This document shows, in pieces, positions 1,949-60,457 of a DNA stretch of 64,000 nucleotides (the stretch's first letter is position 1; each line of letters starts with the position of its first letter). The stretch is from the IMG/VR virus record IMGVR_UViG_3300021520_000002, positions 62,001-126,000 of that record; one strand, written 5' to 3'. Made by a program: the position numbers and the translations under genes. The notes below the pieces were generated by a model that made no database searches, was not told the DNA's origin, and saw only the letters and a program-made list of their open reading frames with translations.

Positions 1949-1962
1949 TATTGGAGACTATT

Positions 1963-5410: not shown

Positions 5411-6007
5411 ATGTTATCAATAGGTTTTTTATTTGAAGATGAAGAAGATGATATTGATATGGAACAATATTTTGAAGATCGGACAAATTATCATATTGGT
5501 CTTGTAAATAGTTATTTAGATGAAATAATTGAATTACATGATCCACGTTTAGATCTTGCCGTTTTAGAACAAGAAAAAGAAATACATGATCAAAGTAAAT
5601 TTGAAGAACCAGAATATGAACCTTATGTTAAATTAACATGGAATTATTATTTAAAAGATCATGGTAAAAAAATTGATTCTTCACAAGATGAATTAAAGAA
5701 AATACAAGCGGCAACTTTTCATCATGTGAAGAATAATCAACATCATCCTGAATCTTGGGACGAGAATAGTACTATAGAAAGTATCAACAGTAAAGATAGA
5801 GATAAACCAGGGAAAATTGTTGATGCAACAAAAATGTCACTTAATTATATTGCAGCAATGGTAGCTGACTGGATGGCTATGTCAGAAGAGAAAGGAACAG
5901 ATCCATATAAGTGGTGTGAAATGAACATCAATAAAAGATGGAAGTTCACAGAAGAACAAGTTAAATTAATTTATGATCTATTGGATAAGATATGGAAGAA
6001 AAAATAG
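5411..6007 (+). CDS. HD-superfamily (DUF5662-like) phosphohydrolase with N-terminal MLSIGFLFE leader
   Basis: YH...HDQSKF...HHVKNNQHHPE...MVADWMAMS. Confidence 0.75.
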   Translation: MLSIGFLFEDEEDDIDMEQYFEDRTNYHIGLVNSYLDEIIELHDPRLDLAVLEQEKEIHDQSKFEEPEYEPYVKLTWNYYLKDHGKKIDSSQDELKKIQAATFHHVKNNQHHPESWDENSTIESINSKDRDKPGKIVDATKMSLNYIAAMVADWMAMSEEKGTDPYKWCEMNINKRWKFTEEQVKLIYDLLDKIWKKK

Positions 6008-6189
6008 ATGTTAAAACAGAACTAGAAAGATGTAAAAAAGATCCTATATATTTTATAGAGAATTATGTTGAATCGAAAGTTGTTCAATTATTAGATTTTA
6101 AAAAGACTAAAGATGAAAAAATTAAAAAGGAAACAGAAAAAAGAATATTAAAAGTATTATTAGAACATGCTGAAAAACTAGAATGGTGA
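5992..6189 (+). CDS. 65-aa protein resembling the N-terminal helix of the large terminase
   Basis: ELERCKKDPIYFIENYV versus EWFKCRENPFYFILNYV in the terminase at 15449. Confidence 0.6.
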   Translation: MEEKIDVKTELERCKKDPIYFIENYVESKVVQLLDFKKTKDEKIKKETEKRILKVLLEHAEKLEW

Positions 6190-15421: not shown

Positions 15422-15448
15422 GTTCCAAAATTGGAGGCGAAAAATTTT

Positions 15449-30004: not shown

Positions 30005-30373
30005 TTGTATAGTATTTTTACGATATGCTTATTGATAGTTCAAATAGTTGTTTTGATATTAATTTTAACAAGAGTAAAAGGTAAGGATGATGAATTTGTT
30101 ATAGCTAATGCAACATTAGTTAATGTTGTAGATAATTATTATAATATGGTACTTATAGGTCAAGTGGAAGAATTAAGAAAACTTTATGATTTGAATCCTG
30201 AATCTAAAACAAATTCATTAAAACCATATACTGAAAAGTATAATATTTTACTCAAGAATTGTTCTAAAGAAATTATGACTTCATATTTGTCTAAGAATTG
30301 TTTAAGTATATTGTTGAGATATTATAGTGTTGAGAGTTTAGCTTTAATAATCATATCAAATTTTAAAAGGTAA
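30005..30373 (+). CDS. hypothetical protein with N-terminal transmembrane helix
   Basis: IFTICLLIVQIVVLILIL. Confidence 0.6.
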   Translation: MYSIFTICLLIVQIVVLILILTRVKGKDDEFVIANATLVNVVDNYYNMVLIGQVEELRKLYDLNPESKTNSLKPYTEKYNILLKNCSKEIMTSYLSKNCLSILLRYYSVESLALIIISNFKR

Positions 30374-30376
30374 TGT

Positions 30377-33749: not shown

Positions 33750-35357
33750 ATGTACGAACAAGCGATATTTGAAAATTATGAAATGTTCTTAAATGAGCAT
33801 AGTGATGAATTTTCTACTCCAAGTGGAGCATTGAAACTCATTACTGACAACGGTATGTTCAGATCTTATATGGAAGGTTTGACCAACGGCCTTGATTCAA
33901 ATCAGAGAGCTGTTGTTATGTCAGTAGCAAATCGTCAGAGGGAATATCTTTTAACAGAATCCGCAAACGTTCCAGGTTCTACACTGGCATTTGGTTGGAC
34001 TGTTCTTTCTTTCCCTATTCTTGTTGATATTTATGCTGAGCCAGTTGTGTCAGAGCTTTGCAATGTTTATCCAGTATCTTCACCAGTAGCTTCAATTCCT
34101 AGAATCAAAATTATGGCCTATATTAGGGGTTATGATGGAAACGTAACTCAGGTTCGTATGCCTACATTGAATCAGGCAGTAAGACCTGGTGCACTTAATC
34201 TTACAGTAACACCAGCCGTAAGTAATAACATTTTTACTATTGCTTCAGCTGCAGTTGCTCCTGCAACAGTAACATCAGATATGTACAGAATTAACAGGAG
34301 ATATACTCTTCTTACAGCTGTTCAGATTAATGAAACAACTGCTCTTGGTCCTGTTGTTGCACATAACGTATCAGTAACAATTAAACCAGACAACAGAAAT
34401 CAGTTTGTGGGTAGTTTTACATTTAATGATAATACTCCTGCTCCTGTTGGTCCTGTAGCAATTGTTGGTACTTTAAATGGTCATATTGACTATGATTCAG
34501 GCATATTCCAGTATCAGATTGTTTATGCAGTTGGTGCAACAACTTCTACTTTTGCAACAGTTTCAGCAACTATGACTATTCGTTTTATGTCTCTGACAAC
34601 TCAGAATGGTCGTATAAAAGTTAAGATTCAGACAGAAATGACTGATGTAAGCATCGATCAGAATGAAGATTTCTTGATTGAACTTCCTCCGGAAGATATT
34701 CAGGATTTCAGAGCAATCTTTAAGATTGACATTTTGAGAACACTTTCAGAAGCTATTAAGAGACAGATCATGTTAAACAAAGATCAGGATCTTGCATTCT
34801 TCTTAGCAGCTGCAGAAGGTGATATGGCATCTAATGGCGCAGCAGAAGCATTGAATCTTGCAAGTTTTGATGTAACTGGTGGACGTTTTGAGCCTAACAA
34901 AGTCATCGACGTTTTCAAAGCAGTAATTCCTAAGATTTCTATTCTTACTGGAATTATTCGTAGAAACTTCAACATGTATCCTTCTTATCTTGTCGCTGGT
35001 TTGAAGACTGCCGCATTACTTAGATCAGTTCAGACTTTCGCTCTCCAGATGCCAGGTATTGGAAATGGCGACGGAGCAGTAGGTTGGGCAGGGGATGTTG
35101 CACAGATGTTGAAGATGAAAGTTCTTGAGTCCAATGCAATCGCTGAAGGTAAGATTTATCTTTCAACGAAAGCTCCGAACAATGCTCTCGAGAAATCAGC
35201 AATTGTAGATTTGATTTATCAACCTCTTTACATTGTAACTGAGGTAACTGATGGTCAGACCAGGAACTATGTAAGATCCAGGACACTCATTGAAATTCCT
35301 AGAACAGATGGTCTTGGTGTTATTAATATTACTGGTCTTGGCACATATTTTACGTAA
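33750..35357 (+). CDS. major capsid protein
   Basis: 535 aa directly after the protease; probable maturation site YLLTE|SA near residue 70; C-terminal YQPLY...VRSRT; highly-expressed codon usage. Confidence 0.85.
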   Translation: MYEQAIFENYEMFLNEHSDEFSTPSGALKLITDNGMFRSYMEGLTNGLDSNQRAVVMSVANRQREYLLTESANVPGSTLAFGWTVLSFPILVDIYAEPVVSELCNVYPVSSPVASIPRIKIMAYIRGYDGNVTQVRMPTLNQAVRPGALNLTVTPAVSNNIFTIASAAVAPATVTSDMYRINRRYTLLTAVQINETTALGPVVAHNVSVTIKPDNRNQFVGSFTFNDNTPAPVGPVAIVGTLNGHIDYDSGIFQYQIVYAVGATTSTFATVSATMTIRFMSLTTQNGRIKVKIQTEMTDVSIDQNEDFLIELPPEDIQDFRAIFKIDILRTLSEAIKRQIMLNKDQDLAFFLAAAEGDMASNGAAEALNLASFDVTGGRFEPNKVIDVFKAVIPKISILTGIIRRNFNMYPSYLVAGLKTAALLRSVQTFALQMPGIGNGDGAVGWAGDVAQMLKMKVLESNAIAEGKIYLSTKAPNNALEKSAIVDLIYQPLYIVTEVTDGQTRNYVRSRTLIEIPRTDGLGVINITGLGTYFT

Positions 35358-42024: not shown

Positions 42025-44253
42025 ATGCCTGTTACTGATAGGAGAGAACCAGCTGTATATGTGACAATAGAAGATGCCTCCTATGCAGCACCAGCTTTAG
42101 AATTAGGTAGAGTTGGTTATGTTGCAACGGTTTGTGATCATGGTGAGCATAATAAAATATTGACAATAACAGCTCGTGATGAATTTCATAAAAAATTAGG
42201 TAAACCAAATTTTAGAAAGACAAGTCAAGCTCATTACTTGATTGATAAGTTTTTACAGTACTCAAATAAGTGTTTGGTTGTGCGAGTTATGCCTGATGAT
42301 GCACATTTATCTAATAGTATAATTGAAGAATCAACAGCTTCTGTAAAAATTATGAAATCTGATGGTGTAAATGAAGCTTCGTTTACGTTTATATCTGCAG
42401 TAAGCACATCTATATGGCAAGAAAGTCATGCTTATACTGCTGGTGCTATAGTAACTGTTTCTGATATTTTAAATTTTATTTATATTGCTGAAACTACTGG
42501 AACAACTGGGTCTTCTCGTCCAGGTTGGCCAATATCACCATCAGTAACTGTTGATGATGGTTCAGTTCGATGGAGATGTGAATTAAATCCTTATAATATT
42601 GTAACATGTACAGATTCAAATTCTTATGATGTTGTTTCTGTTGGTACTTGGATTTTTGCTGAAGATGATAGTCCTTCTAATGCAGCCCAAGTAGTTTCAA
42701 AAACAAATGTTGGTGGTTATTATTTAACAATTGATAGAAATTATGATGGAACTGCTCCAGTTGGACCACCATCTCTAGGATATTCATGTACTCCTTATTA
42801 TCAATGGAGTGATACATCAATATCATCAACAGCTGATTTTAATGTTTTATCAAGTACAGTTGTTTGGTATTTTTATGCAAAAGGTGCTGGATCTTATTAT
42901 AATAATATAACACTTAAAGGTGTCAGAAATGTACAGATGGAAAAAATGTACACGGATGATAATGGTGAAGTTAAATATCCTTATCTTTTTATGGATGTTG
43001 GAATTTATTATGTTAATGATGATAATACTGAATCTTTATTAGAAGGACCATGGACTGTATCATTGATTCGTAGAACAGAAAATGGTTCTATTATTCGTGA
43101 CATTACTAGTGGTCAAGTTTTATATATTGAAGATGTTATAAATCAATCAAGTGATTATCTTGGAGTCATTTCTGCTGATGGGGTAAATCAATTAATAAAT
43201 GCTACAGACGCTGCTGAAAGGCGTCTTGAAGTTATGTTAATTCTTAGCATAACTGGAACAACTATAACCTCAGCTGGAAATATTGCTGATGGTGGATTAG
43301 TTTTTCTAAATGGAGCGGATGGTACGGTAGATACTGCTAGAACAAAGCAAATGTATAATTCAGATACTGGTTATCTTGAAACAGATAATGATTATCTTAT
43401 GGCACTAGTTACTCAAGCTTATAATGGAACATTAACATCAACAGATGGTTCAGTTGAACAAATTCCAGAATGTGTCTACCCTTGGTACGACATTGATTAT
43501 GTTCTTACAGGTGGATACCCAGCGGCAGTTCAGTATGGTGGAAGAACTCTTGCTGATATTAGACAGGATTGTGTACATCTTGCAGATACTGGTAGTTTAA
43601 TAACAAACTATCAGGATGATATAACCGCAAGGTTAGAAAGTGTTGACTGGAATAATTGGACGTCAATGTTATATGTTCAGTATCGAAGAATTTTTGATAC
43701 TTTTACTGGTGAATATTTATGGATAAATCCAGTATATCATGCTATTGAAAGGCATTTATATTGTGATGCAGTTTATTTCTTAGCTGAGCCAGTTGCCGGT
43801 ATTGAGAAAGGTGCAATTAGTGAAAAGATTGATCTTGCATATAAAGGAAATCACACCCAGCGTGGTGATTTGCAGGATAAAAATCTTAATATGGTTATTG
43901 TAGAACCTCAGGGTAAATATATATTAACTCAGTTAACTACATGGAAAAGATTATCAGTTTTACAGAGAGGACATGTTGCTAAATTTGTTGCATATATTCG
44001 TAAAGAAATTCCTAAATTTCTCAAGGATATTTTACAGAGAAGAGCAACTTCTTATTGGATAGGTCAAGCACAATATCGGACCAGTGAATTTTTATCTAAA
44101 TTTTTAGAATCAAGTGTTGAAAGATATTCGGTTCTTAAAAGTTTCACTGTAAGTGTTGTTTTTGATGATGCTAGAAATGAATTAAATGTTTATGTTGATA
44201 TCACACCGATCAGATCAATTGAAAGAATTAATGTATTTATTATAGTTCATTAA
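42025..44253 (+). CDS. contractile tail sheath protein
   Basis: PAVYVTIED, LVVRV, AKGAGSYYN, PVAGIEKG, PIRSIERINV. Confidence 0.92.
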   Translation: MPVTDRREPAVYVTIEDASYAAPALELGRVGYVATVCDHGEHNKILTITARDEFHKKLGKPNFRKTSQAHYLIDKFLQYSNKCLVVRVMPDDAHLSNSIIEESTASVKIMKSDGVNEASFTFISAVSTSIWQESHAYTAGAIVTVSDILNFIYIAETTGTTGSSRPGWPISPSVTVDDGSVRWRCELNPYNIVTCTDSNSYDVVSVGTWIFAEDDSPSNAAQVVSKTNVGGYYLTIDRNYDGTAPVGPPSLGYSCTPYYQWSDTSISSTADFNVLSSTVVWYFYAKGAGSYYNNITLKGVRNVQMEKMYTDDNGEVKYPYLFMDVGIYYVNDDNTESLLEGPWTVSLIRRTENGSIIRDITSGQVLYIEDVINQSSDYLGVISADGVNQLINATDAAERRLEVMLILSITGTTITSAGNIADGGLVFLNGADGTVDTARTKQMYNSDTGYLETDNDYLMALVTQAYNGTLTSTDGSVEQIPECVYPWYDIDYVLTGGYPAAVQYGGRTLADIRQDCVHLADTGSLITNYQDDITARLESVDWNNWTSMLYVQYRRIFDTFTGEYLWINPVYHAIERHLYCDAVYFLAEPVAGIEKGAISEKIDLAYKGNHTQRGDLQDKNLNMVIVEPQGKYILTQLTTWKRLSVLQRGHVAKFVAYIRKEIPKFLKDILQRRATSYWIGQAQYRTSEFLSKFLESSVERYSVLKSFTVSVVFDDARNELNVYVDITPIRSIERINVFIIVH

Positions 44254-46849: not shown

Positions 46850-46888
46850 TTGGGTGACCCGAAGGTCACCCTTTGATTATGCAATTTG
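46850..46888 (-). terminator. cUUCGg-loop terminator, 39-bp direct repeat copy B
   Basis: Matches 45560..45598. Confidence 0.85.
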
Positions 46889-47498
46889 AATATTTGATAT
46901 TTGCTATATTATAAGCTATAGCTGCATCCTCTTTAACATCAAAATAACCTAAATGTATTCGTTTTTTATTAATACTAATTAAAGCTTTCCATTTTTTATG
47001 ATATTTATTCCAACTAACACCTTTATAACCATTATTATTTTGAATAGTTCTATTATTAATATTTTGCAATTTAGTACAAACTCTTAAATTCTCTTCAAGA
47101 TTATTTAATCTATTTCTATTTTTATGATCTATTTCATATCCTTCTGGTACTACTTGTCCAGACATAGAAATTATTGCTTGATGTAATCTTATATTATGTT
47201 GTATATTATCTATATTTGACCATGAAGTTGCAACATAATTTCCATCTGTTAATCCCCATTTGTATTTTTCTATTTCTGATTTATATTTAAGATCAAAAAT
47301 AGTTTCAGCAACTTCTTTACATTTTCGATTATATAATTTCATTCTACAAATATTATTTTCAACTATAATTTCATTTGGATCATATATTGTTCTTTCTAAT
47401 ATTTTACCATGAATTCGGATTTGTTGATAATGTTTACTACAATAATCTGTTTTTCCGTAACAATTTTTAACACATTTTTCAATAGAACAAATTTTCAT
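46866..47498 (-). CDS. free-standing HNH homing endonuclease with AP2 domain
   Basis: RLHQ...EIDHKNRNRLNNLEENLR; GYKGVSW...KWKA...HLGYF...AAIAYN. Confidence 0.88.
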   Translation of the reverse strand: MKICSIEKCVKNCYGKTDYCSKHYQQIRIHGKILERTIYDPNEIIVENNICRMKLYNRKCKEVAETIFDLKYKSEIEKYKWGLTDGNYVATSWSNIDNIQHNIRLHQAIISMSGQVVPEGYEIDHKNRNRLNNLEENLRVCTKLQNINNRTIQNNNGYKGVSWNKYHKKWKALISINKKRIHLGYFDVKEDAAIAYNIANIKYSNCIIKG

Positions 47499-48261: not shown

Positions 48262-48623
48262 TTTTTCTCCTCAACATCTACATATGAAACTGATTTAGCA
48301 ATTCTATCACAAGTACAAAGAGCAATTCTTTTTGTATCATATGTCACTTTTACTAATTTACCACTTACTGCCGCAGTTTTAAATATTTTTATCATATCTA
48401 AACTATTAGGTATAAGTACATGTACATCTTCAGTAGACATAGAACCTACTCCATTTCTCATAATACCCATACTAATATCAGCAGCAACATAATCTGGACA
48501 AATAATTGGTGTTTCATTTGTTACTTTTTTAACTTGACCTATTAATTCACTATCTCGTTGGGTATAACCACAACTACTAATTAATATGATCATTAAACAC
48601 ATTACAAACATTTTTATTTTCAT
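48258..48623 (-). CDS. putative lipoprotein
   Basis: Lipobox-like ISSC after a hydrophobic leader. Confidence 0.65.
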   Translation of the reverse strand: MKIKMFVMCLMIILISSCGYTQRDSELIGQVKKVTNETPIICPDYVAADISMGIMRNGVGSMSTEDVHVLIPNSLDMIKIFKTAAVSGKLVKVTYDTKRIALCTCDRIAKSVSYVDVEEKK

Positions 48624-49162
48624 TTTTTTATCCTGTCTATGAGATTTGTTATTTCTGTTTCTGAAACTGGTTTAAATCCCCACATTTCAACACCAACATT
48701 AATTACATTTTCTTGTATTAGAAATAGGTCATGAATATGACCACATATGAAAATTTTATTTCTATCAATACAACTAACACAAGGGTCGTGTACTAAAATA
48801 ACTTTATATTCTTCTCGATATAATGCTTCTTCATTTGTTATATTTAAATCTAATTCTAAAGCTGTATGAACAGTTTTAAATCCCATTCGAACATAATCAA
48901 ATGGTTTGAACTCATCATGATTACCAAGAATCAAATGATGAGTTCCATTTAACTGATCAAATATTCTTGTAATTATATTAAGTTCATAATGTCTTGCCAT
49001 TGCAAAATCACCAACACAATAAGTTACATCATCATCAGAAACAACATCATTAAAATTTCTGATTAAAGTTTTTGTCATTTCTTTGAGATTTCTAAATGGT
49101 CTTGATGCTAAAGTTAAAATTCCTTCATGATTGAAGTGAGAGTCAGACCAGTAATATTTCAT
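48620..49162 (-). CDS. calcineurin-like metallophosphoesterase
   Basis: SDSHF, VGDF, LGNHD, VH, GHIH, NVGVE. Confidence 0.9.
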   Translation of the reverse strand: MKYYWSDSHFNHEGILTLASRPFRNLKEMTKTLIRNFNDVVSDDDVTYCVGDFAMARHYELNIITRIFDQLNGTHHLILGNHDEFKPFDYVRMGFKTVHTALELDLNITNEEALYREEYKVILVHDPCVSCIDRNKIFICGHIHDLFLIQENVINVGVEMWGFKPVSETEITNLIDRIKK

Positions 49163-49431
49163 TCTTTCTCCTCAATTGTAGTCACAACAGTTTGAGCATT
49201 TTCTAATAGTTCTAAATGACCTACTTTACTTCTTTGTGTTCTACTAATTGTTTTAATATATTTTTCTTCTAATTGTAAAATTGTTGCATGATCAGGAGCA
49301 TCTGGATGTTTATATGTAACTTCTATAATTTCCACTAAATCAATTGAATTATATTCTAAGTTACTAGGTCTTGTATACCAAGCAATATGTTTTTCTTTTA
49401 TTTTTTGTTCTTCTTCGATATTGATTATCAT
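49159..49431 (-). CDS. hypothetical protein
   Basis: ATGA-coupled ORF. Confidence 0.6.
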   Translation of the reverse strand: MIINIEEEQKIKEKHIAWYTRPSNLEYNSIDLVEIIEVTYKHPDAPDHATILQLEEKYIKTISRTQRSKVGHLELLENAQTVVTTIEEKE

Positions 49432-49613
49432 TCTTTCTCCTTATAAGGATACATCTTCTCCATTTGAGCATAATAACGATCAACTCTAGATCGATCTATT
49501 TCTTTTTCAATATTACCAATTCTTCTTTCAATTTTATTTTTTTCTTTTCTTGACGCTAATCGTTTCATATTAATTAGTTCATTTTTTTGAACTACAAGAT
49601 TTGAAAGTGTCAT
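49428..49613 (-). CDS. hypothetical basic protein
   Basis: Tightly packed ORF. Confidence 0.55.
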   Translation of the reverse strand: MTLSNLVVQKNELINMKRLASRKEKNKIERRIGNIEKEIDRSRVDRYYAQMEKMYPYKEKE

Positions 49614-49614
49614 A

Positions 49615-49884
49615 TTATGGCCTCAATTTAACATCATATACAAGATTATTATGAATCAAACCTCCTAACTTAACAGCTTCATTCATTTTATCTTTATATA
49701 TAACTTTGCTAATTGTAAAACCAACAGACATTCCAACTAATACCCAAATTATCAGAATAGTTAAATGTTTCTTTAACCAGATATTGAGTTTATCCCACCA
49801 ATCTATTGGAGAATTAAAAGTTTTTACTTGTTGTTTCTGATTCATTATTATTTCACTTTCTGGATTGTATATTCCTTCACTCAT
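49615..49884 (-). CDS. small membrane protein
   Basis: One hydrophobic helix. Confidence 0.6.
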   Translation of the reverse strand: MSEGIYNPESEIIMNQKQQVKTFNSPIDWWDKLNIWLKKHLTILIIWVLVGMSVGFTISKVIYKDKMNEAVKLGGLIHNNLVYDVKLRP

Positions 49885-50374
49885 TTTTAACTCCTTTTAC
49901 ATTTTCTTGTATAAACTCTAAAAGATTTCCACCTTCAAATTTATATCCTTTTATTCCAGCGGCAAAAGCTGCTTGCATATCTCTATCACGATCTCCAATC
50001 ATAAAAGAAGCACCAGTATTTATTGGATTATTATCAAAAATTGCCGATAGAAATAAACCTGTCTTTGGTTTTCTACAACCACAATCATCTTCATCAATAT
50101 GTGGACATATATAGAATGCATCGATTTTTTTGCCGATATTAACTTCTAATGTTTTATTTATCCATTGATGTAATTTATCGACTTGTTTCTTTGTATATAA
50201 TTTTTTACCGATACCACTTTGATTAGTGATAACAATAACTTTATATCCATTCTTTTTTAATAATTTAATAGCTTCTTTAGCTCCATCGATCCATTTAAAA
50301 TCTTTCTTATCCCAAATATATCCAACATCATGATTGATAACTCCATCACGATCTAAAAAAGCAATCTTATTCAT
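49877..50374 (-). CDS. gmhB: D-glycero-D-manno-heptose 1,7-bisphosphate phosphatase
   Basis: FLDRDGVIN, ITNQSGIG, CPH...CGCRKPK, MIGDRDRD. Confidence 0.92.
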   Translation of the reverse strand: MNKIAFLDRDGVINHDVGYIWDKKDFKWIDGAKEAIKLLKKNGYKVIVITNQSGIGKKLYTKKQVDKLHQWINKTLEVNIGKKIDAFYICPHIDEDDCGCRKPKTGLFLSAIFDNNPINTGASFMIGDRDRDMQAAFAAGIKGYKFEGGNLLEFIQENVKGVKNE

Positions 50375-50378
50375 TTAT

Positions 50379-50573
50379 TTATCCTTTTATAATTAAATTT
50401 TCTATAAAGCGTTCAATTACAGTTTCAAAATATGATTGATGTTGATATGGGTTATCTTCTTTTTGTTCAATAATTGCTTGAAGTAATTTTTCTTTTATCA
50501 TTTTTGAAATTTCTATTTTATCATTTTCATTTAATATTATATTATAATATTTTTTTGGTTCTAATGTTGCCAT
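50379..50573 (-). CDS. hypothetical protein
   Basis: Tightly packed ORF. Confidence 0.55.
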   Translation of the reverse strand: MATLEPKKYYNIILNENDKIEISKMIKEKLLQAIIEQKEDNPYQHQSYFETVIERFIENLIIKG

Positions 50574-50908
50574 TATTTTACTTCCTTATCGAAATGACCC
50601 ATATTATAATGTTTTTCAAGATCTTCCATATTATTAATTAATATATTACACGAACAAGCTATTGAATCTTTTCCTCTTATAGTATCTACAACTTCATCTA
50701 ATGATGGTCTTATCATTTCTTTCATTTCTAAAGGTGGAGTATTTATATAATCAATTATAAAGTTTATTTGATTAGAACATTCATTAACTTTATTCCAAAT
50801 ATCAGTTTGCCAAGCATGTCTAACTTTAAGACCTTGTGATGCACCAGTTTTTTCATTTACAATTTCTTCAAAAAGTGGTGGTAATTTTTCAATCTTTTTC
50901 ATAACCAT
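50573..50908 (-). CDS. hypothetical protein
   Basis: ORF with GAGGAG RBS. Confidence 0.55.
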   Translation of the reverse strand: MVMKKIEKLPPLFEEIVNEKTGASQGLKVRHAWQTDIWNKVNECSNQINFIIDYINTPPLEMKEMIRPSLDEVVDTIRGKDSIACSCNILINNMEDLEKHYNMGHFDKEVK

Positions 50909-51842
50909 TCTCCTCTAAATGTTTAATTAATTCTTCTTGTGTTATAGCGGCAGTTCCTAATTTTTCAACTACAAGTCCAGCTGCTATATTAGATAATTTA
51001 ACAGCTTGTTCAATTTCTGCTCCAGCACCAAGTGCAAGAGCAAGAACTGATACAACTGTGTCACCTGCGCCGCTAACATCATATACTTGTCTAGCTGTTG
51101 ATGGAAAGTCTAATCTATCTTTATCTCTACGAAGAAGAGTCATACCTTTTTCACCTCTAGTGATAAGTATATTTTTAATATCAAAACTTCCATTTAAATA
51201 ATCTAATTTATCAATATCATCACTATTTGTTACAAGAAATAATTCTTTCATATTAGGAGTTATAACAGTTGCTCCAGAATACTTACGCCAATTTTTTCTT
51301 TTTGGATCTATTATGATTGGTTTATTTCTGAAATGGGACATTACAACATCCAATATATCATCTGTTACTGTTCCTTTATCATAATCTGATATCACAACAA
51401 CATCAAAATCTTCATAATTATTTATATTATCAAATATTATTTTATTTTCATCAATAACAGATATTTGGTGATTTGGTTCTTTATCTATTCTTACAATTTG
51501 ATGACCATGAGCAACTATTCTATTTTTAGTAATAGTTGACCAAAATTTATCAATAAATAAATTTGATCTTATATCAAAATTTTCAAATGATTGTTTGAGA
51601 ATTTTTCCATCATCATCATCACCAATTACACCTGTTATTTCAACATTTCCTCTAAGTGATTTGATATTATAAGCTGTATTGCCAGCTCCCCCAGGTCTCA
51701 TAGTTGTTCGTTCAAATTTCATAATAGGAACTGGAGCTTCAGGAGATATCCTATCTACAGTTCCTATTGTGTATTTATCTAACATTACATCTCCAATAAC
51801 AAACACTTTAACTTGACTAAATTTTTCAATTATTTGTTTCAT
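50889..51842 (-). CDS. hldA: D-glycero-beta-D-manno-heptose-7-phosphate kinase (HldE/RfaE kinase domain)
   Basis: GDVMLDKY..G.VDRISPEAPVP, GGAGN, SDYDKG, TPNMKE, DVSGAGDT. Confidence 0.93.
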   Translation of the reverse strand: MKQIIEKFSQVKVFVIGDVMLDKYTIGTVDRISPEAPVPIMKFERTTMRPGGAGNTAYNIKSLRGNVEITGVIGDDDDGKILKQSFENFDIRSNLFIDKFWSTITKNRIVAHGHQIVRIDKEPNHQISVIDENKIIFDNINNYEDFDVVVISDYDKGTVTDDILDVVMSHFRNKPIIIDPKRKNWRKYSGATVITPNMKELFLVTNSDDIDKLDYLNGSFDIKNILITRGEKGMTLLRRDKDRLDFPSTARQVYDVSGAGDTVVSVLALALGAGAEIEQAVKLSNIAAGLVVEKLGTAAITQEELIKHLEENGYEKD

Positions 51843-52336
51843 TATTTTTCTCCAAAATATCTTCTATAAAAGTTTTTCTCACCATCATGGTGATTACTTC
51901 TTTCAATACCATGTTCAAAAATAGCGCTTTTAATTCTTTGTAGAAATCTAGGCATCTCTTTTTCACTAGGTTTCTTTTTCATTCCTAATAACATTACAGC
52001 ATCACCCAATGCTTCTCTTAATTTCCAATTATTTTGTCTTTCACAAAAATTTTTATAATCTTTAAGAGATTGTGTTACAGATCCTAAAATTTCTGGAATA
52101 TGTTCTGGATATTCTGAAATGAAATTCTTAATTTTTTTAAGTTGTTCTTCTTGTTCATATGGTAGCATTTGTCTCCTTTTTATATGAAATGGTGCGCTAT
52201 TACGCCAAAAGATTCCAACCCTGTATCCCACCCATGGCACATCACTTAAAGCTCTTACCCCTTTAAGCATTTTGCACCAGGTGGAGTGTTCATATCTACT
52301 CTTTAAAGGATGGCTGCTTCGAGGCCTACCTCCCAT
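51842..52336 (-). CDS. hypothetical protein
   Basis: 164-aa ORF inside the heptose cluster. Confidence 0.6.
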   Translation of the reverse strand: MGGRPRSSHPLKSRYEHSTWCKMLKGVRALSDVPWVGYRVGIFWRNSAPFHIKRRQMLPYEQEEQLKKIKNFISEYPEHIPEILGSVTQSLKDYKNFCERQNNWKLREALGDAVMLLGMKKKPSEKEMPRFLQRIKSAIFEHGIERSNHHDGEKNFYRRYFGEK

Positions 52337-52344
52337 TTCATTTA

Positions 52345-52602
52345 TTAGAAATGTTTATCGTTACGAAATGGAATATTATCATAATTTCCATAATCACCAA
52401 AAATTTCCATAGGAACTAATATTTGTTTATCATTATGTGAATGATTTCTAAGATTATATATAATACTAGACATTCTATCAATTGTTTTTTGTAACTTTTT
52501 CACTTCTATTCTTGTACGTTCAATTTTTTCACTATCACTAAGTTCTTCCCAATATTTTTCTCTACTACATACTGCTTTGTCTTGTTGTTCATCCATTTTC
52601 AA
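52345..52602 (-). CDS. hypothetical coiled-coil protein
   Basis: ORF overlapping the upstream stop. Confidence 0.55.
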   Translation of the reverse strand: MKMDEQQDKAVCSREKYWEELSDSEKIERTRIEVKKLQKTIDRMSSIIYNLRNHSHNDKQILVPMEIFGDYGNYDNIPFRNDKHF

Positions 52603-53569
52603 TTTCTCCTTTCATTCTTTCTCTGATAGTTGTATATATCATATGATTGATCATGAAATAAACTTCTTGAATAATTTCAGTTATAAGTGATGGTATTCGA
52701 ATGGTATAATTACTATTATTCACTAGATTTATACTTGGATTTTGTCCAGCAAAAGTAATAATTTTACATTTTACACGTTGCCCTTCAAGAGCAGCTCGTA
52801 ATATATTTTTTGATTTGCCGCTAGTTGAAAGTAATAATAAAACATCTTTTTTATCTAAAAAAGGTATAAGTAGATTATGAAAAACATATTCATAAGATAC
52901 ATCATTACCCATTGAAGTTACAGCTGAAATGTTTTCTGTAAGAGCGATTGCTGGAAGTCCTATACACATAAATTCACCAGCTAGATGAATCGCATCTGCA
53001 GCACTTCCTCCATTACCACATATTACTAATTTACCACCTCTTTTAAAAGATTTAAATATAACATCAATAATTTCTTTAATTATACCATTATGTTTTTCAT
53101 TTTCATCTAATAATTTTATTGCTTCACAGTGAATTTTCATATATCCATTTTCAGGAAGACATGATTTTTGAATATTACTAATAATATTAGTTGTTGAATA
53201 TTTATCAAGTCTTGGAATAGCAACAACTTCACCACTCCATTCTTTTACAAGTTCTTCTTCAATCTCTAATCTTCCTTCCCAATCTCCACCTTTAACAATA
53301 ATATCTGGTTTTATTCTTTTTATTAAATTATCAGGTCTTTCTTCATTAAATACAATAACATTATCGACATATCTTGTATGTAATAACATTACTTCTCTAT
53401 CTACCTGATTTCTAAAAGGTTTTCTTCCTCTTAGTTTCTCGAATGATGAATCACTATTTAAACCAACAATTAATTCATCACCAAGTGATTTAGCTTTTCT
53501 AAGTAAATGAAGGTGACCAGGATGTAATATTTCAAAACATCCATTAGTGAATACTGTTTTTGGTTTCAT
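52589..53569 (-). CDS. hldC-gmhA: fusion of heptose-1-phosphate adenylyltransferase (HldC/RfaE2) and phosphoheptose isomerase (GmhA)
   Basis: N-half TNGCFEILHPGH, GLNSDSS, VKGGDW, YSTT; C-half CGNGGSAADAIH, GND, STSGKS, IQE. Confidence 0.92.
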   Translation of the reverse strand: MKPKTVFTNGCFEILHPGHLHLLRKAKSLGDELIVGLNSDSSFEKLRGRKPFRNQVDREVMLLHTRYVDNVIVFNEERPDNLIKRIKPDIIVKGGDWEGRLEIEEELVKEWSGEVVAIPRLDKYSTTNIISNIQKSCLPENGYMKIHCEAIKLLDENEKHNGIIKEIIDVIFKSFKRGGKLVICGNGGSAADAIHLAGEFMCIGLPAIALTENISAVTSMGNDVSYEYVFHNLLIPFLDKKDVLLLLSTSGKSKNILRAALEGQRVKCKIITFAGQNPSINLVNNSNYTIRIPSLITEIIQEVYFMINHMIYTTIRERMKGEIENG

Positions 53570-53784
53570 TTCTTTTCTCCTGGAATTTCACATGTAATAC
53601 TTTTTGCTCCAAAGGCTTTTTGTTCATATTTGATTAATCCTTTCACAGCTTCACAACTTTTAATAATAGATAATTCTGTTTCGTGTTCTAATAGTAATAT
53701 TTTTTCTTGATGATCATAATCTTGTTTTGAGCTACATGAAACTAATAATAAACTAATAAATATTAGTATTATATATTTTTTCAT
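53566..53784 (-). CDS. putative lipoprotein
   Basis: MKKYIILIFISLLLVSC lipobox. Confidence 0.65.
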   Translation of the reverse strand: MKKYIILIFISLLLVSCSSKQDYDHQEKILLLEHETELSIIKSCEAVKGLIKYEQKAFGAKSITCEIPGEKK

Positions 53785-54032
53785 TATTTATCCTTTATTT
53801 TGTTATAATATAAAATTAGAACTTCTAAGGCACAAGAAAGAGCTTTGTATTTTCTATCAAAACTTTTTTGTATACAACCTCCATCGAATCTCACTTCATC
53901 ATTACGCCACCAATAAACTCCTTTCATGTTCAATCTATAATCATTTTTCTTGTTAAATATATATCCAACAACTTTATGATTATATACTAATTGAGTATTT
54001 CCATTTGGTAATCTATATGTTGAAAACGTCAT
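53784..54032 (-). CDS. hypothetical protein
   Basis: Coupled ORF. Confidence 0.55.
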   Translation of the reverse strand: MTFSTYRLPNGNTQLVYNHKVVGYIFNKKNDYRLNMKGVYWWRNDEVRFDGGCIQKSFDRKYKALSCALEVLILYYNKIKDK

Positions 54033-54340
54033 TTGTTCTCCTCAAGCATTCTAACAGGTTTCCCATGAACGATGGCGTATGCTATTTCTTTTTTCGTACT
54101 TTCTCCAATGTAACCACCAACATTAATAATCAACACTTCATCAGCAAGATCTATTTTTCTGAGATGTAATTTGTCTAACATCTTTTTGACTTCTCCGTTC
54201 ATATCTATTCCTTCAATATGACCAAATAATCCAACTGTTAAAACAATTTTACCTTTTAATGTTTCTTCTTTCATTGCTTGTTCATATTCATTTTTAAATC
54301 TTGTTGAACCACAAAGACATACTATTTTGGGTCTATCCAT
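54029..54340 (-). CDS. nucleoside 2-deoxyribosyltransferase-like (NDT-fold) protein
   Basis: IVCLCGS.RF...KIDLADEVLIINVGGYIGESTKKEIAYA...GKPV. Confidence 0.7.
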   Translation of the reverse strand: MDRPKIVCLCGSTRFKNEYEQAMKEETLKGKIVLTVGLFGHIEGIDMNGEVKKMLDKLHLRKIDLADEVLIINVGGYIGESTKKEIAYAIVHGKPVRMLEENK

Positions 54341-54353
54341 TTCTCCTCCTTTC

Positions 54354-54617
54354 TCAGTATAAATCCTCAGACATTAATGTTGGTGATGCCCAAGGGTCTT
54401 TATGGTCTATCAATTGATTACACTCTACCGCTATTTTAAATGCTTCGTGTCTATCCACAAATATGTCAGCATCAGTTATAAAACCCTGTGTATACTCAGA
54501 GTGTTTAACGGGTCTATCTCCCGTTTCTTCAACTATCTTTTTTATAACATCACCATGACGTTTACCTGTCCAGACCTTACCATCACTAATCCTTTGAATT
54601 GCTGATTCTTTAATCAT
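54354..54617 (-). CDS. small phage protein (G.RH...QGF.TD...FVDR.EA..IA)
   Basis: ATG 54617 after AAGGAG (ORF track 54665 runs into the structured RNA). Confidence 0.65.
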   Translation of the reverse strand: MIKESAIQRISDGKVWTGKRHGDVIKKIVEETGDRPVKHSEYTQGFITDADIFVDRHEAFKIAVECNQLIDHKDPWASPTLMSEDLY

Positions 54618-55388: not shown

Positions 55389-55649
55389 TTAAACCAACTC
55401 ATGTTGTTCTCCTTTATTGTAGTTTTTCATATATGGATCTATATTGTCCATAGCTTTTTGAATATTAAAACATATTTTACTTCCACAAATTGGACAATTT
55501 TTAGTTGCTCTTGTATCATAAATAATTTCACATTCAATACATAATACAGCATATCTTAATCCTATAGAACTAATTATTTGTGTATTATTTGATATAACTG
55601 AAATTTGTATGTCTTCTTTTTTAAAGAATTTATTTATGAAGTTGTTCAT
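55389..55649 (-). CDS. small zinc-ribbon protein
   Basis: CIEC...CPICGS. Confidence 0.65.
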   Translation of the reverse strand: MNNFINKFFKKEDIQISVISNNTQIISSIGLRYAVLCIECEIIYDTRATKNCPICGSKICFNIQKAMDNIDPYMKNYNKGEQHELV

Positions 55650-56398
55650 AATCTAAACTCTTGACCTTTCATGACAAATCCTTTAAATCCATCATGTTTA
55701 GCAGCAGGAAGAGGACCATCTTGATAATGACATAACCACATCTTTTTACGAATATTTTCAGGTAGTGTTAATAGTTCAGAATAATGTGCGTGAACTCCAC
55801 TTTTAAAAGGAGTTGTTTCACAGTCCTGAAAAATTAAATCTGCTGATGCATAAAAATCTTTAATCTGATTAGGATTAAACTGTGTATCTGTTGTTATGAA
55901 TATATTTTTAGTTTTAGTTCTTAATTTCAATCCAAAACATGGTCTAATACTAAATCCATCCATTATATGTACTACCTGGATAGGTGTTATTAAAATATTA
56001 TTCCAATGAACAGTTTCATTTTGACTAATAGCAATTACGTTAAAATAATCACTTAATTTCATTATCTTATTTTGAATACTTCCCAAACCACCAGATAATG
56101 TATTTTGCCATATTGATTCTTCTAAGGCTTTACTTATTAATAGATCAGGTTTAGTACAAGATGGATCAAAATATCGGCAAAAAGCTAAATATTCTAATCC
56201 ACCGGCATGATCTGCATGAAGATGTGAAATATACACTTCTGTTATATCTTTATATGACATTCCAGAATCTTTCAATGAAAATCTAATATCTGAACCTGCA
56301 TCAATTAAAAGTTTTTCTTTACCTTTAGTTAATAACATATTTGTTTGATAATTTGTCATTGAAAAAGCACTTCCACTTCCTAAGAATTTTAGTATCAT
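55646..56398 (-). CDS. MBL-fold metallohydrolase, Apyc1-like (cyclic nucleotide phosphodiesterase / RNase Z-like)
   Basis: FLGSGSAF, LIDAG, SHLHADHAGGLE, LSGGL, FQDCE, GVHAHY.ELLTLP, WLCHY. Confidence 0.8.
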   Translation of the reverse strand: MILKFLGSGSAFSMTNYQTNMLLTKGKEKLLIDAGSDIRFSLKDSGMSYKDITEVYISHLHADHAGGLEYLAFCRYFDPSCTKPDLLISKALEESIWQNTLSGGLGSIQNKIMKLSDYFNVIAISQNETVHWNNILITPIQVVHIMDGFSIRPCFGLKLRTKTKNIFITTDTQFNPNQIKDFYASADLIFQDCETTPFKSGVHAHYSELLTLPENIRKKMWLCHYQDGPLPAAKHDGFKGFVMKGQEFRL

Positions 56399-56424: not shown

Positions 56425-56512
56425 TGGTGGCGCTGACTGGACTTGAACCAGCATGGAGAAAATCTCCGAGAGATTTTAAATCTCTTGTGTAAACCAATTC
56501 CACCACAGCGCC
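56425..56512 (-). tRNA. tRNA-Leu(TAA)
   Basis: GGCGCTG...AGAGA-TTTAAAA-TCTCT...GTTCAAGTC...CAGCGCC A CCA; long variable arm. Confidence 0.95.
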
Positions 56513-56814: not shown

Positions 56815-56904
56815 TGGCGGAGAGCGTAGGATTTGAACCCACGAACCGCTTTCACGATTTCTAGTTTTCAAGACTAGCACCATCAGCCTCTCGGTCAGCT
56901 CTCC
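56815..56904 (-). tRNA. tRNA-Ser(TGA)
   Basis: GGAGAGC...CTAGT-CTTGAAA-ACTAG...GTTCAAATC...GCTCTCC G CCA; long variable arm. Confidence 0.95.
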
Positions 56905-60361: not shown

Positions 60362-60385
60362 TTTACCTCTTTTTGTTAGATTGAG

Positions 60386-60457
60386 TTGCAGGGGTCAGAC
60401 TTGAACTGACGACTTGAAGCTTATGAGGCTTCCACGCTACCTCTGCGTCACCCTGCA
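60386..60457 (-). tRNA. tRNA with CAT anticodon (elongator Met or Ile2), CCA not encoded
   Basis: TGCAGGG...GAAGC-CTCATAA-GCTTC...GTCAG-TTCAAGT-CTGAC-CCCTGCA-A. Confidence 0.88.

What the first reader, a model, noticed from the sequence alone, without database searches (positions are those of the whole stretch)
49877..53569. Phage-encoded complete ADP-heptose pathway with an HldC-GmhA fusion
GmhA, HldA, GmhB and HldC activities (sedoheptulose-7-P to ADP-D-glycero-beta-D-manno-heptose) are all present, interleaved with small phage ORFs. The first and last steps are fused, rather than the kinase-transferase fusion of E. coli HldE. No HldD epimerase or heptosyltransferase is in the window. Possible uses are heptosylation of phage DNA or virion proteins, or remodelling of host LPS. 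The product is an ALPK1 agonist in animals.
Basis: partly seen in the sequence, partly recalled or inferred. Interest (0 to 1): 0.7.

Follow-up and report, generated by a model that had tools for sequence, protein, structure and literature searches.

The report
Phage heptose pathway feeding fibre glycosylation
A 285-kb freshwater jumbo phage encodes all four enzyme activities that make the sugar donor ADP-heptose, and elsewhere two protein heptosyltransferases beside serine/threonine-rich fibre genes, so it most likely sugar-coats its own fibres rather than its DNA or the host's LPS.

Summary
On the minus strand, 52589-53569 encodes an HldC-GmhA fusion, 50889-51842 an HldA kinase and 49877-50374 a GmhB phosphatase. 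All catalytic motifs are intact, and four small unknown ORFs lie between them. The region is real phage DNA: single contigs from three lake metagenome runs span it with no differences.

Parts of the interpretation need correcting. The HldC-GmhA fusion is not a phage invention. Thousands of bacterial proteins share it, and in bacteria it also sits directly upstream of hldA. Heptose genes were already known in cyanophages and uncultured viruses. A virus that also carries GmhB, giving all four activities, is rare.

The missing heptosyltransferase exists outside the window. Two multidomain proteins (genome 14148-15839 and 21461-25276) pass the curated model for TibC/AAH-type protein O-heptosyltransferases. 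They are fused to methyltransferase, GT4 and GT-A domains. They lie beside a repeat tail-fibre gene and collagen-like (Gly-Ser/Thr-Ser/Thr)n genes. No HldD, GT2 or hydroxymethylase gene occurs in the genome.

Best reading: a self-sufficient system that O-heptosylates virion fibres. This is inferred, not shown. 8 of 38 viral records with HldA also carry this transferase, and 43 of 80 viral loci with the transferase carry such collagen-like genes.

The parts
52589..53569 (-). HldC-GmhA fusion gene (326 aa): heptose-1-phosphate adenylyltransferase fused to sedoheptulose-7-phosphate isomerase
   Evidence: Pfam PF01467 plus PF13580. NCBIfam TIGR02199 145 bits and TIGR00441 120 bits, both below their equivalog cut-offs. 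Motifs intact against 5X9Q and 2XBL. The 7 phage-context homologues sit on one side of a 100/99 branch against 53 bacterial fusions.
53165..53560 (-). HldC (nucleotidyltransferase) domain, residues 4-135
   Evidence: HxGH motif (HPGH), KGGD and STT present. Tyr, not Arg, precedes STT, so it lacks the STTR5 hallmark of CTP/UTP-promiscuous enzymes (PMC11573728).
52610..53107 (-). GmhA (SIS isomerase) domain, residues about 155-320
   Evidence: Aligned to Burkholderia GmhA 2XBL at E 4e-25, with the His/Glu/Gln/His active-site positions and the STSGKS phosphate loop conserved.
52345..52602 (-). 85-aa ORF of unknown function between the fusion gene and the kinase gene
   Evidence: No Pfam, NCBIfam or PHROG match. 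70% identical in relative L005; absent from L006 and L010.
51842..52336 (-). 164-aa ORF of unknown function
   Evidence: No family match. 87-91% identical but split into two ORFs in L005; absent from L006 and L010. Not a conserved part of the module.
50889..51842 (-). [quoted passage not shown]
   Evidence: TIGR02198 348.6 bits, cut-off 345. 4E84 at E 7e-59 with the GAGD motif. Only 47% identical to the kinase of relative L005, whose flanking genes are 86-93% identical, which points to a xenologous replacement.
50573..50908 (-). 111-aa ORF of unknown function
   Evidence: No family match. No homologue in L005, L006 or L010.
50379..50573 (-). 64-aa ORF of unknown function
   Evidence: No family match. 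No homologue in the relatives.
49877..50374 (-). GmhB, heptose-1,7-bisphosphate 7-phosphatase (165 aa)
   Evidence: NF006506 (beta-anomer type) 162 bits against cut-off 178; the alpha-type model scores only 111 bits. All four HAD motifs and the Cys/His zinc site are conserved against E. coli GmhB 3L8E.
49615..49884 (-). 89-aa predicted single-pass membrane protein that travels with the module
   Evidence: Overlaps the GmhB stop. Conserved next to the module in L005 (90%), L006 (59%) and L010/L011 (49%). Function unknown.

Best explanation
The three genes form a working, co-transcribed pathway. The GmhA domain isomerises host sedoheptulose-7-P. HldA phosphorylates C1. GmhB removes the 7-phosphate. 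[quoted passage not shown] No epimerase acts afterwards.

The donor is then used by the phage's own two TibC/AAH-family (BAHT) O-heptosyltransferases:
- P0122, genome 14148-15839: BAHT plus SAM methyltransferase.
- P0121, genome 21461-25276: GT4-type glycosyltransferase, methyltransferase, GT-A-fold domain, then BAHT.

These enzymes put heptose on Ser/Thr of virion fibre proteins in the cytoplasm before assembly. The attached domains then extend and O-methylate the glycan.

The most likely acceptors are:
- the collagen-like (Gly-Ser/Thr-Ser/Thr)n proteins (genome 29125-31286, plus a giant one of over 2000 aa that runs off both contig ends);
- the 872-aa repeat tail fibre encoded directly after P0121.

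Carrying the whole donor pathway makes the phage independent of the host's heptose supply.

Shown here: the gene content, the intact motifs, the family memberships and the co-occurrence statistics. Inferred: enzyme activity, the flow of donor to the transferases, and the identity of the acceptors.
For: Pathway:
- Domain matches and intact catalytic residues for all four activities.
- The order fusion, HldA, GmhB is kept in relatives down to 45% identity, while the filler ORFs vary.
- The kinase was replaced by a 47%-identical version in a relative whose flanks are 86-93% identical. This suggests the function, not the particular gene, is what is kept.

Consumers:
- Both BAHT proteins pass the TIGR04414 equivalog cut-off (265 and 215 bits against 200).
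- Both align to TibC 4RAP at E 1e-46 and 1e-35.
- Both keep the catalytic Asp110, Thr226, Lys230, Trp305 and all four iron-finger Cys (residue roles from PMC4358343).
- TibC's natural donor is ADP-D,D-heptose and AAH accepts it too, so no HldD is needed (PMC4358343).
- These are the only heptose-type transferases in the genome. There is no GT2, and the only GT1 hit lies inside P0121.

Acceptors:
- P0121 is followed directly by an 872-aa fibre with about 350 aa of 24-aa and 15-aa repeats, 21% Ser+Thr. This echoes the aah-aidA and tibC-tibA adjacency.
- Collagen-like proteins with 33-48% Ser+Thr lie 4 kb downstream and at the contig ends.

Across other phages:
- 43 of 80 IMG/VR BAHT loci carry an open frame with at least 20 G[ST][ST] triplets, 39 of them on the BAHT strand. 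There were none in 148 kb of loci not selected for BAHT.
- Other BAHT neighbours are tail sheath (40 loci), tube (37), baseplate hub (28), tape measure (16) and portal (12).
- The cultured Microcystis phage Mel-JY01 has the same trio: a collagen-like frame, a Ser-rich structural protein and a methyltransferase-BAHT protein.
- 8 of 38 HldA-bearing viral records of 40 kb or more (4.3 Mb in all) carry a BAHT above the cut-off. In the 2.3-Gb phage collection only 4 of 50,697 records do.
- The 71-75% relative L015 keeps both BAHT genes and has a divergent HldC-like gene right after one of them.
- The extra domain of P0121, and its 324-aa paralogue, fold as GT-A (pLDDT 91; Foldseek 3CGX E 3e-6).
Against: - Nothing here measures activity or glycosylation.
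- The pathway and the BAHT genes are about 87 kb apart and on opposite strands.
- The converse co-occurrence fails. None of 16 large BAHT-bearing viral records has HldA, and none of 80 BAHT loci has a heptose gene within 10 kb. Most phage BAHTs therefore work without a phage pathway, or use another donor.
- Arg286, which reads the adenine in TibC, is Ser or Thr in the phage enzymes, so donor specificity is not settled.
- HldC, GmhA and GmhB score below NCBIfam equivalog cut-offs.
- The complex prediction of BAHT with the fibre repeats gave no verdict.
- The host is unknown, so I cannot say whether it lacks heptose.
- The loci in the co-occurrence counts are not phylogenetically independent.
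Confidence: 0.5

Rival explanations
1. Host envelope remodelling. The phage boosts or restores ADP-heptose supply for the host's own LPS-core or capsule heptosyltransferases during infection. This is the role usually proposed for the heptose genes of cyanomyoviruses.
For: Cyanomyoviruses carry HldC, HldA and GmhA genes annotated as LPS-related and lack BAHT. In bacteria the same fusion-hldA pair sits in surface-glycan clusters. 30 of 38 HldA-bearing viral records show no BAHT above the cut-off.
Against: LPS cores normally use L,D-heptose, yet the phage brings no HldD. It brings no WaaC/WaaF-type GT9; both PF01075 hits are BAHT-type. A host that makes heptosylated LPS already has all four enzymes, so retaining the full set, GmhB included, would be redundant. 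The phage does encode dedicated protein heptosyltransferases.
Confidence: 0.2
2. The BAHT enzymes, fed by the phage pathway, heptosylate host proteins rather than virion proteins. Targets could be surface adhesins, S-layer proteins or receptors. The purpose could be to block superinfection or change cell-surface properties.
For: All characterised BAHTs modify bacterial surface autotransporters in the cytoplasm before export (PMC4358343). The acceptor was not identified here.
Against: In this genome and in IMG/VR loci the BAHT genes lie in virion-structural neighbourhoods, next to phage-encoded Ser/Thr-rich repeat proteins. No autotransporter-like gene was seen beside them.
Confidence: 0.1
3. 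The pathway is intact, but the two BAHT-like enzymes use a different donor. ADP-heptose then serves an unidentified purpose, such as a small-molecule or signalling role near the anti-defence gene Apyc1.
For: The adenine-reading Arg286 is not conserved. Most BAHT-bearing viral records lack heptose genes. An Apyc1 anti-Pycsar homologue lies 2 kb from the module.
Against: The heptose-contacting Trp305, Lys230, Thr226 and the catalytic Asp are conserved, and the equivalog model is passed. No other candidate consumer was found. HldA and BAHT co-occur far above background.
Confidence: 0.1
4. Heptosylation of phage DNA as an anti-restriction hypermodification.
For: Phages do glycosylate DNA with other sugars (for example 10.1101/2023.12.21.572611, listed).
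Against: No thymidylate-synthase-like hydroxymethylase was found in the genome. No GT2 was found either, and the only glycosyltransferase-family matches (GT9, GT1) lie in the two BAHT proteins, whose family acts on proteins. T4-type DNA glucosyltransferase families were not searched.
Confidence: 0.03
5. Artefact: a host fragment misassembled into a phage contig, or decaying genes.
For: The record's ends fall inside a repeat, and IMG/VR classes it as linear.
Against: Single contigs from three runs of different studies span 48500-54400 with no differences and flat depth. GC is 27-28%, like the flanks. The module recurs in related phage contigs. All frames are open with intact motifs.
Confidence: 0.01

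Closest known systems
[quoted passage not shown]
   Same: The same four enzyme families, the same catalytic motifs and the same beta-anomer branch: a PfkB kinase, a cytidylyltransferase-fold adenylyltransferase and a beta-type GmhB.
   Different: The kinase is separate, and the transferase is fused to the isomerase instead. There is no HldD, so the end product should be the D,D form. The genes are encoded by a virus.
Bacterial HldC-GmhA fusion proteins in surface-glycan clusters (for example a Chloracidobacterium MAG, Pyrinomonadaceae)
   Same: Same domain order and length, about 41% identity. The fusion gene is directly followed by hldA. Methyltransf_23/11 and GT4 genes lie in the same cluster.
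   Different: The phage copies form their own well-supported group. They add GmhB next to the pair, and they partner with BAHT rather than polysaccharide machinery. This fusion type is not among the three nucleotidyltransferase architectures listed in PMC11573728.
Heptose genes of cyanomyoviruses (P-SSM2, S-SSM7, S-CAM1 and others) and the viral heptose biosynthetic enzymes reported by Tang et al. (as summarised in PMC11573728 and PMC11461863)
   Same: Virus-encoded GmhA, HldA and HldC homologues at 24-44% identity.
   Different: Those viruses have separate genes and no GmhB; PMC11461863 notes the phosphatase as absent in viruses. No cultured phage in the collection has a GmhB homologue, and the cyanophages have no BAHT. 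Only 2 of 80 IMG/VR HldA loci show all four activities within 10 kb.
BAHT family: TibC (ETEC) and AAH (DAEC) autotransporter O-heptosyltransferases
   Same: The equivalog model is passed. The N-terminal barrel plus GT-B core aligns end to end. The catalytic Asp, Thr/Lys phosphate binders, heptose-binding Trp and four-Cys iron finger are kept. The gene sits next to a repeat-protein gene.
   Different: The phage enzymes are fused to methyltransferase, GT4 and GT-A domains. Arg286 is replaced by Ser or Thr, and the stereoselectivity residue Pro300 by Ser or Ala. The presumed acceptors are phage fibres, not autotransporters. Dodecamer formation is untested.
Virion glycosylation in mycobacteriophages (Freeman et al. 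2023, Cell Host Microbe; seen only as reference 61 of PMC12801897; content from my own knowledge)
   Same: Phage-encoded glycosyltransferases that O-glycosylate the phage's own structural proteins.
   Different: Different enzyme families, sugars and hosts. No phage-encoded donor pathway is involved. The acceptors there are capsid and tail-tube subunits rather than collagen-like fibres.
Glycosylated collagen-like surface fibres such as Bacillus BclA and Mimivirus fibrils (own knowledge, not tested here)
   Same: Gly-X-Y repeats rich in Thr/Ser that carry dense O-glycans on an outer filament.
   Different: Other sugars and other transferases. The link to the phage proteins is analogy only.

Membership tests
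GmhA (sedoheptulose-7-phosphate isomerase) | SIS fold with the conserved His/Glu and Gln/His active-site positions and the Ser/Thr phosphate loop | tested here: met
   Alignment to 2XBL at E 4e-25; GNGGSAADAxH..GEF, STSGKS and IQE..H are conserved.
GmhA (sedoheptulose-7-phosphate isomerase) | Score above the curated equivalog cut-off (TIGR00441, 209 bits) | tested here: not met
   119.7 bits. This is a divergent domain within a fusion. DiaA, the nearest other SIS family, scores far lower at 52 bits.
HldA (heptose-7-phosphate kinase, PfkB) | Score above the TIGR02198 cut-off, and the GAGD catalytic motif | tested here: met
   348.6 bits against 345. DVSGAGDT aligned to 4E84 at E 7e-59.
HldC (heptose-1-phosphate adenylyltransferase) | HxGH and STT nucleotidyltransferase motifs, with the best match to rfaE domain II rather than TagD or CoaD | tested here: met
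   HPGH, KGGD and STT present. TIGR02199 scores 145 bits against TagD 75 bits. 5X9Q at E 3e-26. The equivalog cut-off of 181.5 is not reached.
GmhB (heptose-1,7-bisphosphate 7-phosphatase) | The four HAD-IIIA motifs plus the Cys/His zinc site, with preference for the beta-anomer model | tested here: met
   All motifs aligned to 3L8E. NF006506 scores 162 bits against the alpha-type NF050049 at 111 bits. The cut-off of 178 is narrowly missed.
HldE-type bifunctional enzyme | Kinase and adenylyltransferase in one polypeptide | tested here: not met
   The kinase is a separate 317-aa gene. The transferase is fused to GmhA instead.
Complete ADP-L,D-heptose pathway | HldD 6-epimerase present | tested here: not met
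   No PF01370 or TIGR02197 match anywhere in the 285-kb genome; the controls responded.
BAHT (TibC/AAH protein O-heptosyltransferase), for the two proteins outside the window | Score above the TIGR04414 equivalog cut-off (200 bits) | tested here: met
   264.6 bits (P0121, residues 911-1268) and 215.2 bits (P0122, residues 4-356).
BAHT (TibC/AAH protein O-heptosyltransferase) | Catalytic Asp110, Thr226, Lys230, Trp305 and the four iron-finger Cys (PMC4358343) | tested here: met
   All conserved in both proteins. Asp, Trp and the four Cys are invariant and the Lys nearly so among 10 phage or environmental homologues.
BAHT (TibC/AAH protein O-heptosyltransferase) | Arg286 contacting adenine N1 (ADP specificity) | tested here: not met
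   Ser in P0121 and Thr in P0122; variable in the environmental clade. The nucleotide specificity of the donor is therefore open.
BAHT (TibC/AAH protein O-heptosyltransferase) | Heptosyl transfer to Ser of a repeat protein; iron-containing dodecamer | not testable with these tools
   Needs biochemistry. The complex prediction gave no verdict.
ADP-heptose pathway as a whole | Enzymes convert sedoheptulose-7-P plus ATP to ADP-D,D-heptose | not testable with these tools
   Inferred from homology and motifs only.

The most novel reading that the evidence does not exclude
This phage lineage shows what virus-made NDP-heptose is for. It feeds TibC-like enzymes that hyper-O-heptosylate, and then methylate and extend, Ser/Thr-rich collagen-like and repeat fibres of the virion. 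This would be a widespread but undescribed virion glycosylation system of aquatic phages, with at least 589 BAHT homologues in IMG/VR. This lineage would be the self-sufficient version, carrying the complete donor pathway.
Probability: 0.4. Interest if true: 0.8.

Novelty: new variant of a known kind. Interest (0 to 1): 0.64.

Why it matters
Commentaries on the discovery of heptose biosynthetic enzymes outside bacteria state that the role of these enzymes in viruses is unsolved, and that viruses lack the phosphatase (PMC11573728, PMC11461863). This phage has the phosphatase. It also offers a concrete, testable sink for the product: protein O-heptosyltransferases of a family so far studied, as far as I could find, only in bacterial pathogens, placed beside fibre genes with up to 48% Ser+Thr.

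If the reading holds, three things follow:
- O-heptosylation would be added to the known virion modifications.
- It would explain why a virus invests in a whole sugar-nucleotide pathway. A fibre protein with hundreds of acceptor sites would need a very large donor supply.
- It would point to glycan-coated collagen-like fibres as a common feature of aquatic phages, with consequences for adsorption, protease resistance and host range.

The cultured Microcystis phage Mel-JY01 carries the transferase and a collagen-like gene, which makes the idea directly testable.

If the reading fails, the region remains a well-documented but ordinary auxiliary metabolic module.

Tried and rejected
- **Near relatives in the phage collection.** Megablast of the module found nothing. 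A single-protein scan of viral contigs found only distant HldC genes.
- **BAHT to heptose co-occurrence.** None of 80 IMG/VR BAHT loci has a heptose gene within 10 kb. None of 16 large BAHT records has HldA. The link therefore shows up only in the other direction.
- **Named phage records.** LR756501 has HldA plus BAHT only. LR756504 has GmhA plus BAHT only. LR756511 has an HldE-like gene plus a weak GmhB-like gene and no BAHT. Mel-JY01 has BAHT only. None matches the full set.
- **Complex prediction.** The BAHT domain with fibre repeats scored 0.00, and the partner was poorly folded. This gave no verdict and is not evidence either way.
- **Single-sequence fold of the 324-aa paralogue.** It failed (pLDDT 37). 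Refolding with a 31-row alignment worked.
- **Promoter scan.** 60 sites found against 58.5 expected, so uninformative.
- **Host identity.** Not resolved. The nearest bacterial homologues of the fusion and of HldA are about 41-47% identical and come from mixed phyla.
- **Record behind L010.** It is not held, so I could not check it for BAHT.
- **Other genome searches.** No transaldolase, thymidylate-synthase-like enzyme or GT2 in the genome.
- **Literature.** Searches found no paper on phage BAHT or on Mel-JY01. The Freeman et al. paper could not be read.

Full report
**What the window is.** The window is bases 62001-126000 of a 285,572-bp IMG/VR virus record, which CheckV rates as 95% complete. 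GC is about 29%. It encodes a large terminase (15431-17305), a major-head-like protein (33750-35357), a tail sheath (42025-44253) and a UvsX-like recombinase. It is therefore a jumbo myovirus. Its terminase is at most about 25% identical to anything in the phage collection. The exact sequence of the finding is held by at least nine lake or freshwater metagenome runs from several studies.

**The observation.** From 53569 down to 49615, nine minus-strand ORFs abut or overlap.
- 52589-53569 (326 aa) is a two-domain protein. Residues 4-135 match heptose-1-phosphate adenylyltransferase (HldC). Residues about 155-320 match sedoheptulose-7-phosphate isomerase (GmhA).
- 50889-51842 (317 aa) passes the curated cut-off for heptose-7-phosphate kinase (HldA).
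- 49877-50374 (165 aa) is a GmhB-type HAD phosphatase, and it scores best on the beta-anomer model.

Alignments to solved structures show every catalytic motif in place. The kinase is the PfkB type and the transferase is the cytidylyltransferase-fold type. This is therefore the ADP-beta-heptose branch, not the GDP-alpha-heptose branch. The residue before the STT motif of HldC is Tyr, not the Arg that marks CTP/UTP-promiscuous enzymes (PMC11573728). ADP-heptose is thus the expected product, by inference.

No HldD or any SDR epimerase exists in the whole genome, so the D,D form should be the end product. Four small ORFs with no family match lie between the enzymes.

**Is it real and is it selected?** Single contigs from three runs of different studies cover 48500-54400 with no differences and flat depth. 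Those runs may include the sample the record was assembled from.

Related phage contigs keep the order fusion, kinase, phosphatase at 86%, 50% and 45% identity of the fusion protein. The filler ORFs come and go. In the closest relative the phosphatase is 93% and the fusion 86% identical, but the kinase only 47%. The kinase gene was evidently exchanged while the pathway was kept. A small membrane protein (49615-49884) travels with the module in all relatives. The seven phage-context fusion proteins sit on one side of a 100/99 branch against 53 bacterial ones (the tree is unrooted).

**What is not new.**
- The HldC-GmhA fusion is abundant in bacteria. One search found 6879 hits at E<=1e-10, and the top 120 all have both domains.
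- In a Chloracidobacterium MAG and in another 4-Mb genome the fusion gene is followed directly by hldA. It lies among methyltransferases, GT4 enzymes and epimerases, one of the two clusters also holding a flippase. The phage probably captured an existing cassette.
- Cyanomyoviruses carry separate HldC, HldA and GmhA genes.
- HldA homologues occur in at least 580 IMG/VR stretches.
- Functional viral heptose enzymes have been reported (PMC11573728, PMC11461863).

**What is unusual.** Those reports note that viruses lack the phosphatase. In the phage collection GmhB homologues occur in 9 records, none of them a cultured phage. Only 2 of 80 IMG/VR HldA loci show all four activities within 10 kb. 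The transferase-isomerase fusion is also not among the three architectures listed in PMC11573728.

**The missing transferase.** A genome-wide search for GT9 found two hits outside the window.
- P0122 (genome 14148-15839, 563 aa) is a TibC/AAH-type domain followed by a SAM methyltransferase.
- P0121 (genome 21461-25276, 1271 aa) has four parts: a GT4-type glycosyltransferase, a methyltransferase, an unnamed domain, and a TibC/AAH-type domain.

Both pass the equivalog model for autotransporter O-heptosyltransferases and align to the TibC structure over its full length. They keep the catalytic Asp, the Thr/Lys phosphate binders, the heptose-binding Trp and the four iron-finger Cys defined in PMC4358343. 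The adenine-contacting Arg286 is Ser or Thr. The stereoselectivity residue Pro300 is Ser or Ala, closer to AAH's Ser than to TibC's Pro.

That paper states that ADP-D,D-heptose is TibC's natural donor and that AAH accepts it as well. This fits a phage pathway that stops before epimerisation.

The unnamed domain and a 324-aa paralogue (genome 19985-20959) belong to a small family of 170 representatives. The paralogue folds as a GT-A nucleotide-sugar transferase (pLDDT 91; Foldseek 3CGX E 3e-6, also glycogenin and the collagen glycosyltransferase domains of LH3 and COLGALT1).

The genome has no GT2, no further GT1 and no thymidylate-synthase-like hydroxymethylase. The BAHT proteins are therefore the only recognisable heptose users, and I found no gene pointing to DNA glycosylation.

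**Likely acceptors.** The gene directly after P0121 encodes an 872-aa fibre-like protein. It has about 350 residues of alternating 24-aa (LYYGTSAVDTLLLGKSGTSHTHD-type) and 15-aa repeats.

Four kb further on lie two collagen-like proteins made of Gly-Ser/Thr-Ser/Thr triplets, with 33-38% Ser+Thr. A giant one runs off both ends of the contig: the last 1678 codons are open, as are the first 359. It has 42-48% Ser+Thr.

The pattern recurs elsewhere.
- Among 80 IMG/VR loci chosen only for a BAHT homologue, 43 carry an open frame with at least 20 such triplets, 39 of them on the BAHT strand. There were none in 148 kb of loci fetched for other reasons (a crude control, and the loci are not independent).
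- The other frequent neighbours are sheath, tube, baseplate hub, tape measure and portal genes.
- In the cultured Microcystis phage Mel-JY01, the methyltransferase-BAHT protein is annotated only as 'methyltransferase FkbM'. It follows a Ser-rich structural protein and a 633-codon collagen-like frame, which the record annotates on the wrong strand.

**Coupling of pathway and transferase.**
- From the transferase side the coupling is absent.
- From the pathway side it is present. 8 of 38 HldA-bearing viral records of 40 kb or more (4.3 Mb in all) carry a BAHT above the cut-off, usually 16-27 kb from HldA. One is a close relative with the same spacing of about 83 kb.
- By comparison, BAHT occurs in 4 of 50,697 records of the 2.3-Gb phage collection.
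- In the seven more distant records, only HldA was detectable near the match. The full pathway plus BAHT is therefore specific to this lineage among what I could search.

**Interpretation.** I conclude that the module makes ADP-D,D-heptose. I put about 0.85 confidence on the pathway assignment itself. Its most probable sink is O-heptosylation of the phage's own Ser/Thr-rich fibres by the two BAHT proteins, followed by extension and O-methylation by the fused domains. I put about 0.5 on this whole chain. A fibre with hundreds of acceptor sites per chain would need a very large donor supply, which gives a rationale for carrying the pathway; this last point is inference. The rivals are host envelope remodelling, modification of host proteins, another donor for the BAHTs, and DNA modification. 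They are listed with their evidence in the Rival explanations section.

**Verdict.**
- The fusion and 'phage heptose genes' are known kinds.
- The new elements are the complete four-activity set, its pairing with multidomain protein heptosyltransferases, and the cross-phage association of these with collagen-like fibres.
- All of this is computational and needs the experiments listed under next steps.

Noticed in passing
genome C1:14148-15839 and C1:21461-25276 (outside the window; L003:2148-3839 and L003:9461-13276): Two multidomain proteins with TibC/AAH-type O-heptosyltransferase domains, fused to methyltransferase, GT4 and GT-A domains. Both are kept in the 71-75% relative L015.
   Followed up: yes
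genome C1:25352-27970 (L003:13352-15970): An 872-aa fibre-like protein directly after the BAHT gene. It has about 350 aa of 24-aa and 15-aa tandem repeats containing HxH motifs, and 21% Ser+Thr.
   Followed up: partly
genome C1:29125-30006, 30042-31286, 1-1080 and the last ~5 kb of the contig: Collagen-like (Gly-Ser/Thr-Ser/Thr)n proteins with 33-48% Ser+Thr. The largest runs off both contig ends, so the assembly probably broke inside this repeat. Similar genes sit beside BAHT genes in 43 of 80 IMG/VR loci.
   Followed up: partly
L099 (Microcystis phage Mel-JY01, PP395634.1) about 600-2500, plus strand: A 633-codon open frame with 111 G[ST][ST] triplets lies where the record annotates an antisense 'hypothetical protein'. 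The neighbouring 1226-aa 'methyltransferase FkbM' ends in a BAHT domain.
   Followed up: partly
genome C1:19985-20959 (L003:7985-8959) and P0121 residues ~548-905: An unnamed protein family (170 representatives at E<=1e-3) with a confident GT-A fold. His40, Asp115 (in an EYD motif) and Glu188 are invariant. No Pfam model covers it.
   Followed up: partly
window 55646-56398 (-): A 250-aa homologue of the anti-Pycsar nuclease Apyc1 (PF23023, 99.7 bits), 2 kb upstream of the heptose module and 93% conserved in relative L005.
   Followed up: no
window 50889-51842 (-) compared with L005:6069-7025: The kinase is only 47% identical between two phages whose flanking genes are 86-93% identical. This looks like a gene replacement inside a conserved module.
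   Followed up: partly
window 56425-56512, 56815-56904, 60385-60457 (-): Three phage tRNA genes: Leu(taa), Ser(tga) and Met(cat).
   Followed up: no
genome C1:7806-10565 (L004:7806-10565): A 919-aa protein that matches only PAS-family domains (about six), an unusual sensor-like protein for a phage. It is partly conserved in L015.
   Followed up: no
genome C1:18700-19170 and C1:17477-18013 (L003:6700-7170, 5477-6013): A pyruvoyl-dependent arginine decarboxylase (PvlArgDC, 134 bits) and a LigD_N 3'-phosphoesterase, both lying between the two BAHT genes.
   Followed up: no
window 46866-47498 (-) and genome C1:19188-19745: HNH_3 plus AP2 homing-endonuclease-like ORFs. A similar one lies in relative L005.
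   Followed up: no
L015:21157-21585: In the 71-75% relative, a 142-aa divergent HldC-like nucleotidyltransferase gene (TIGR02199 77.7 bits, below cut-off) directly follows the large BAHT gene. It has no counterpart at that place in this genome.
   Followed up: partly
genome C1:1563-4957 (L004): Five tandem paralogous genes of 219-225 aa with no family match, just after the giant collagen-like gene.
   Followed up: no
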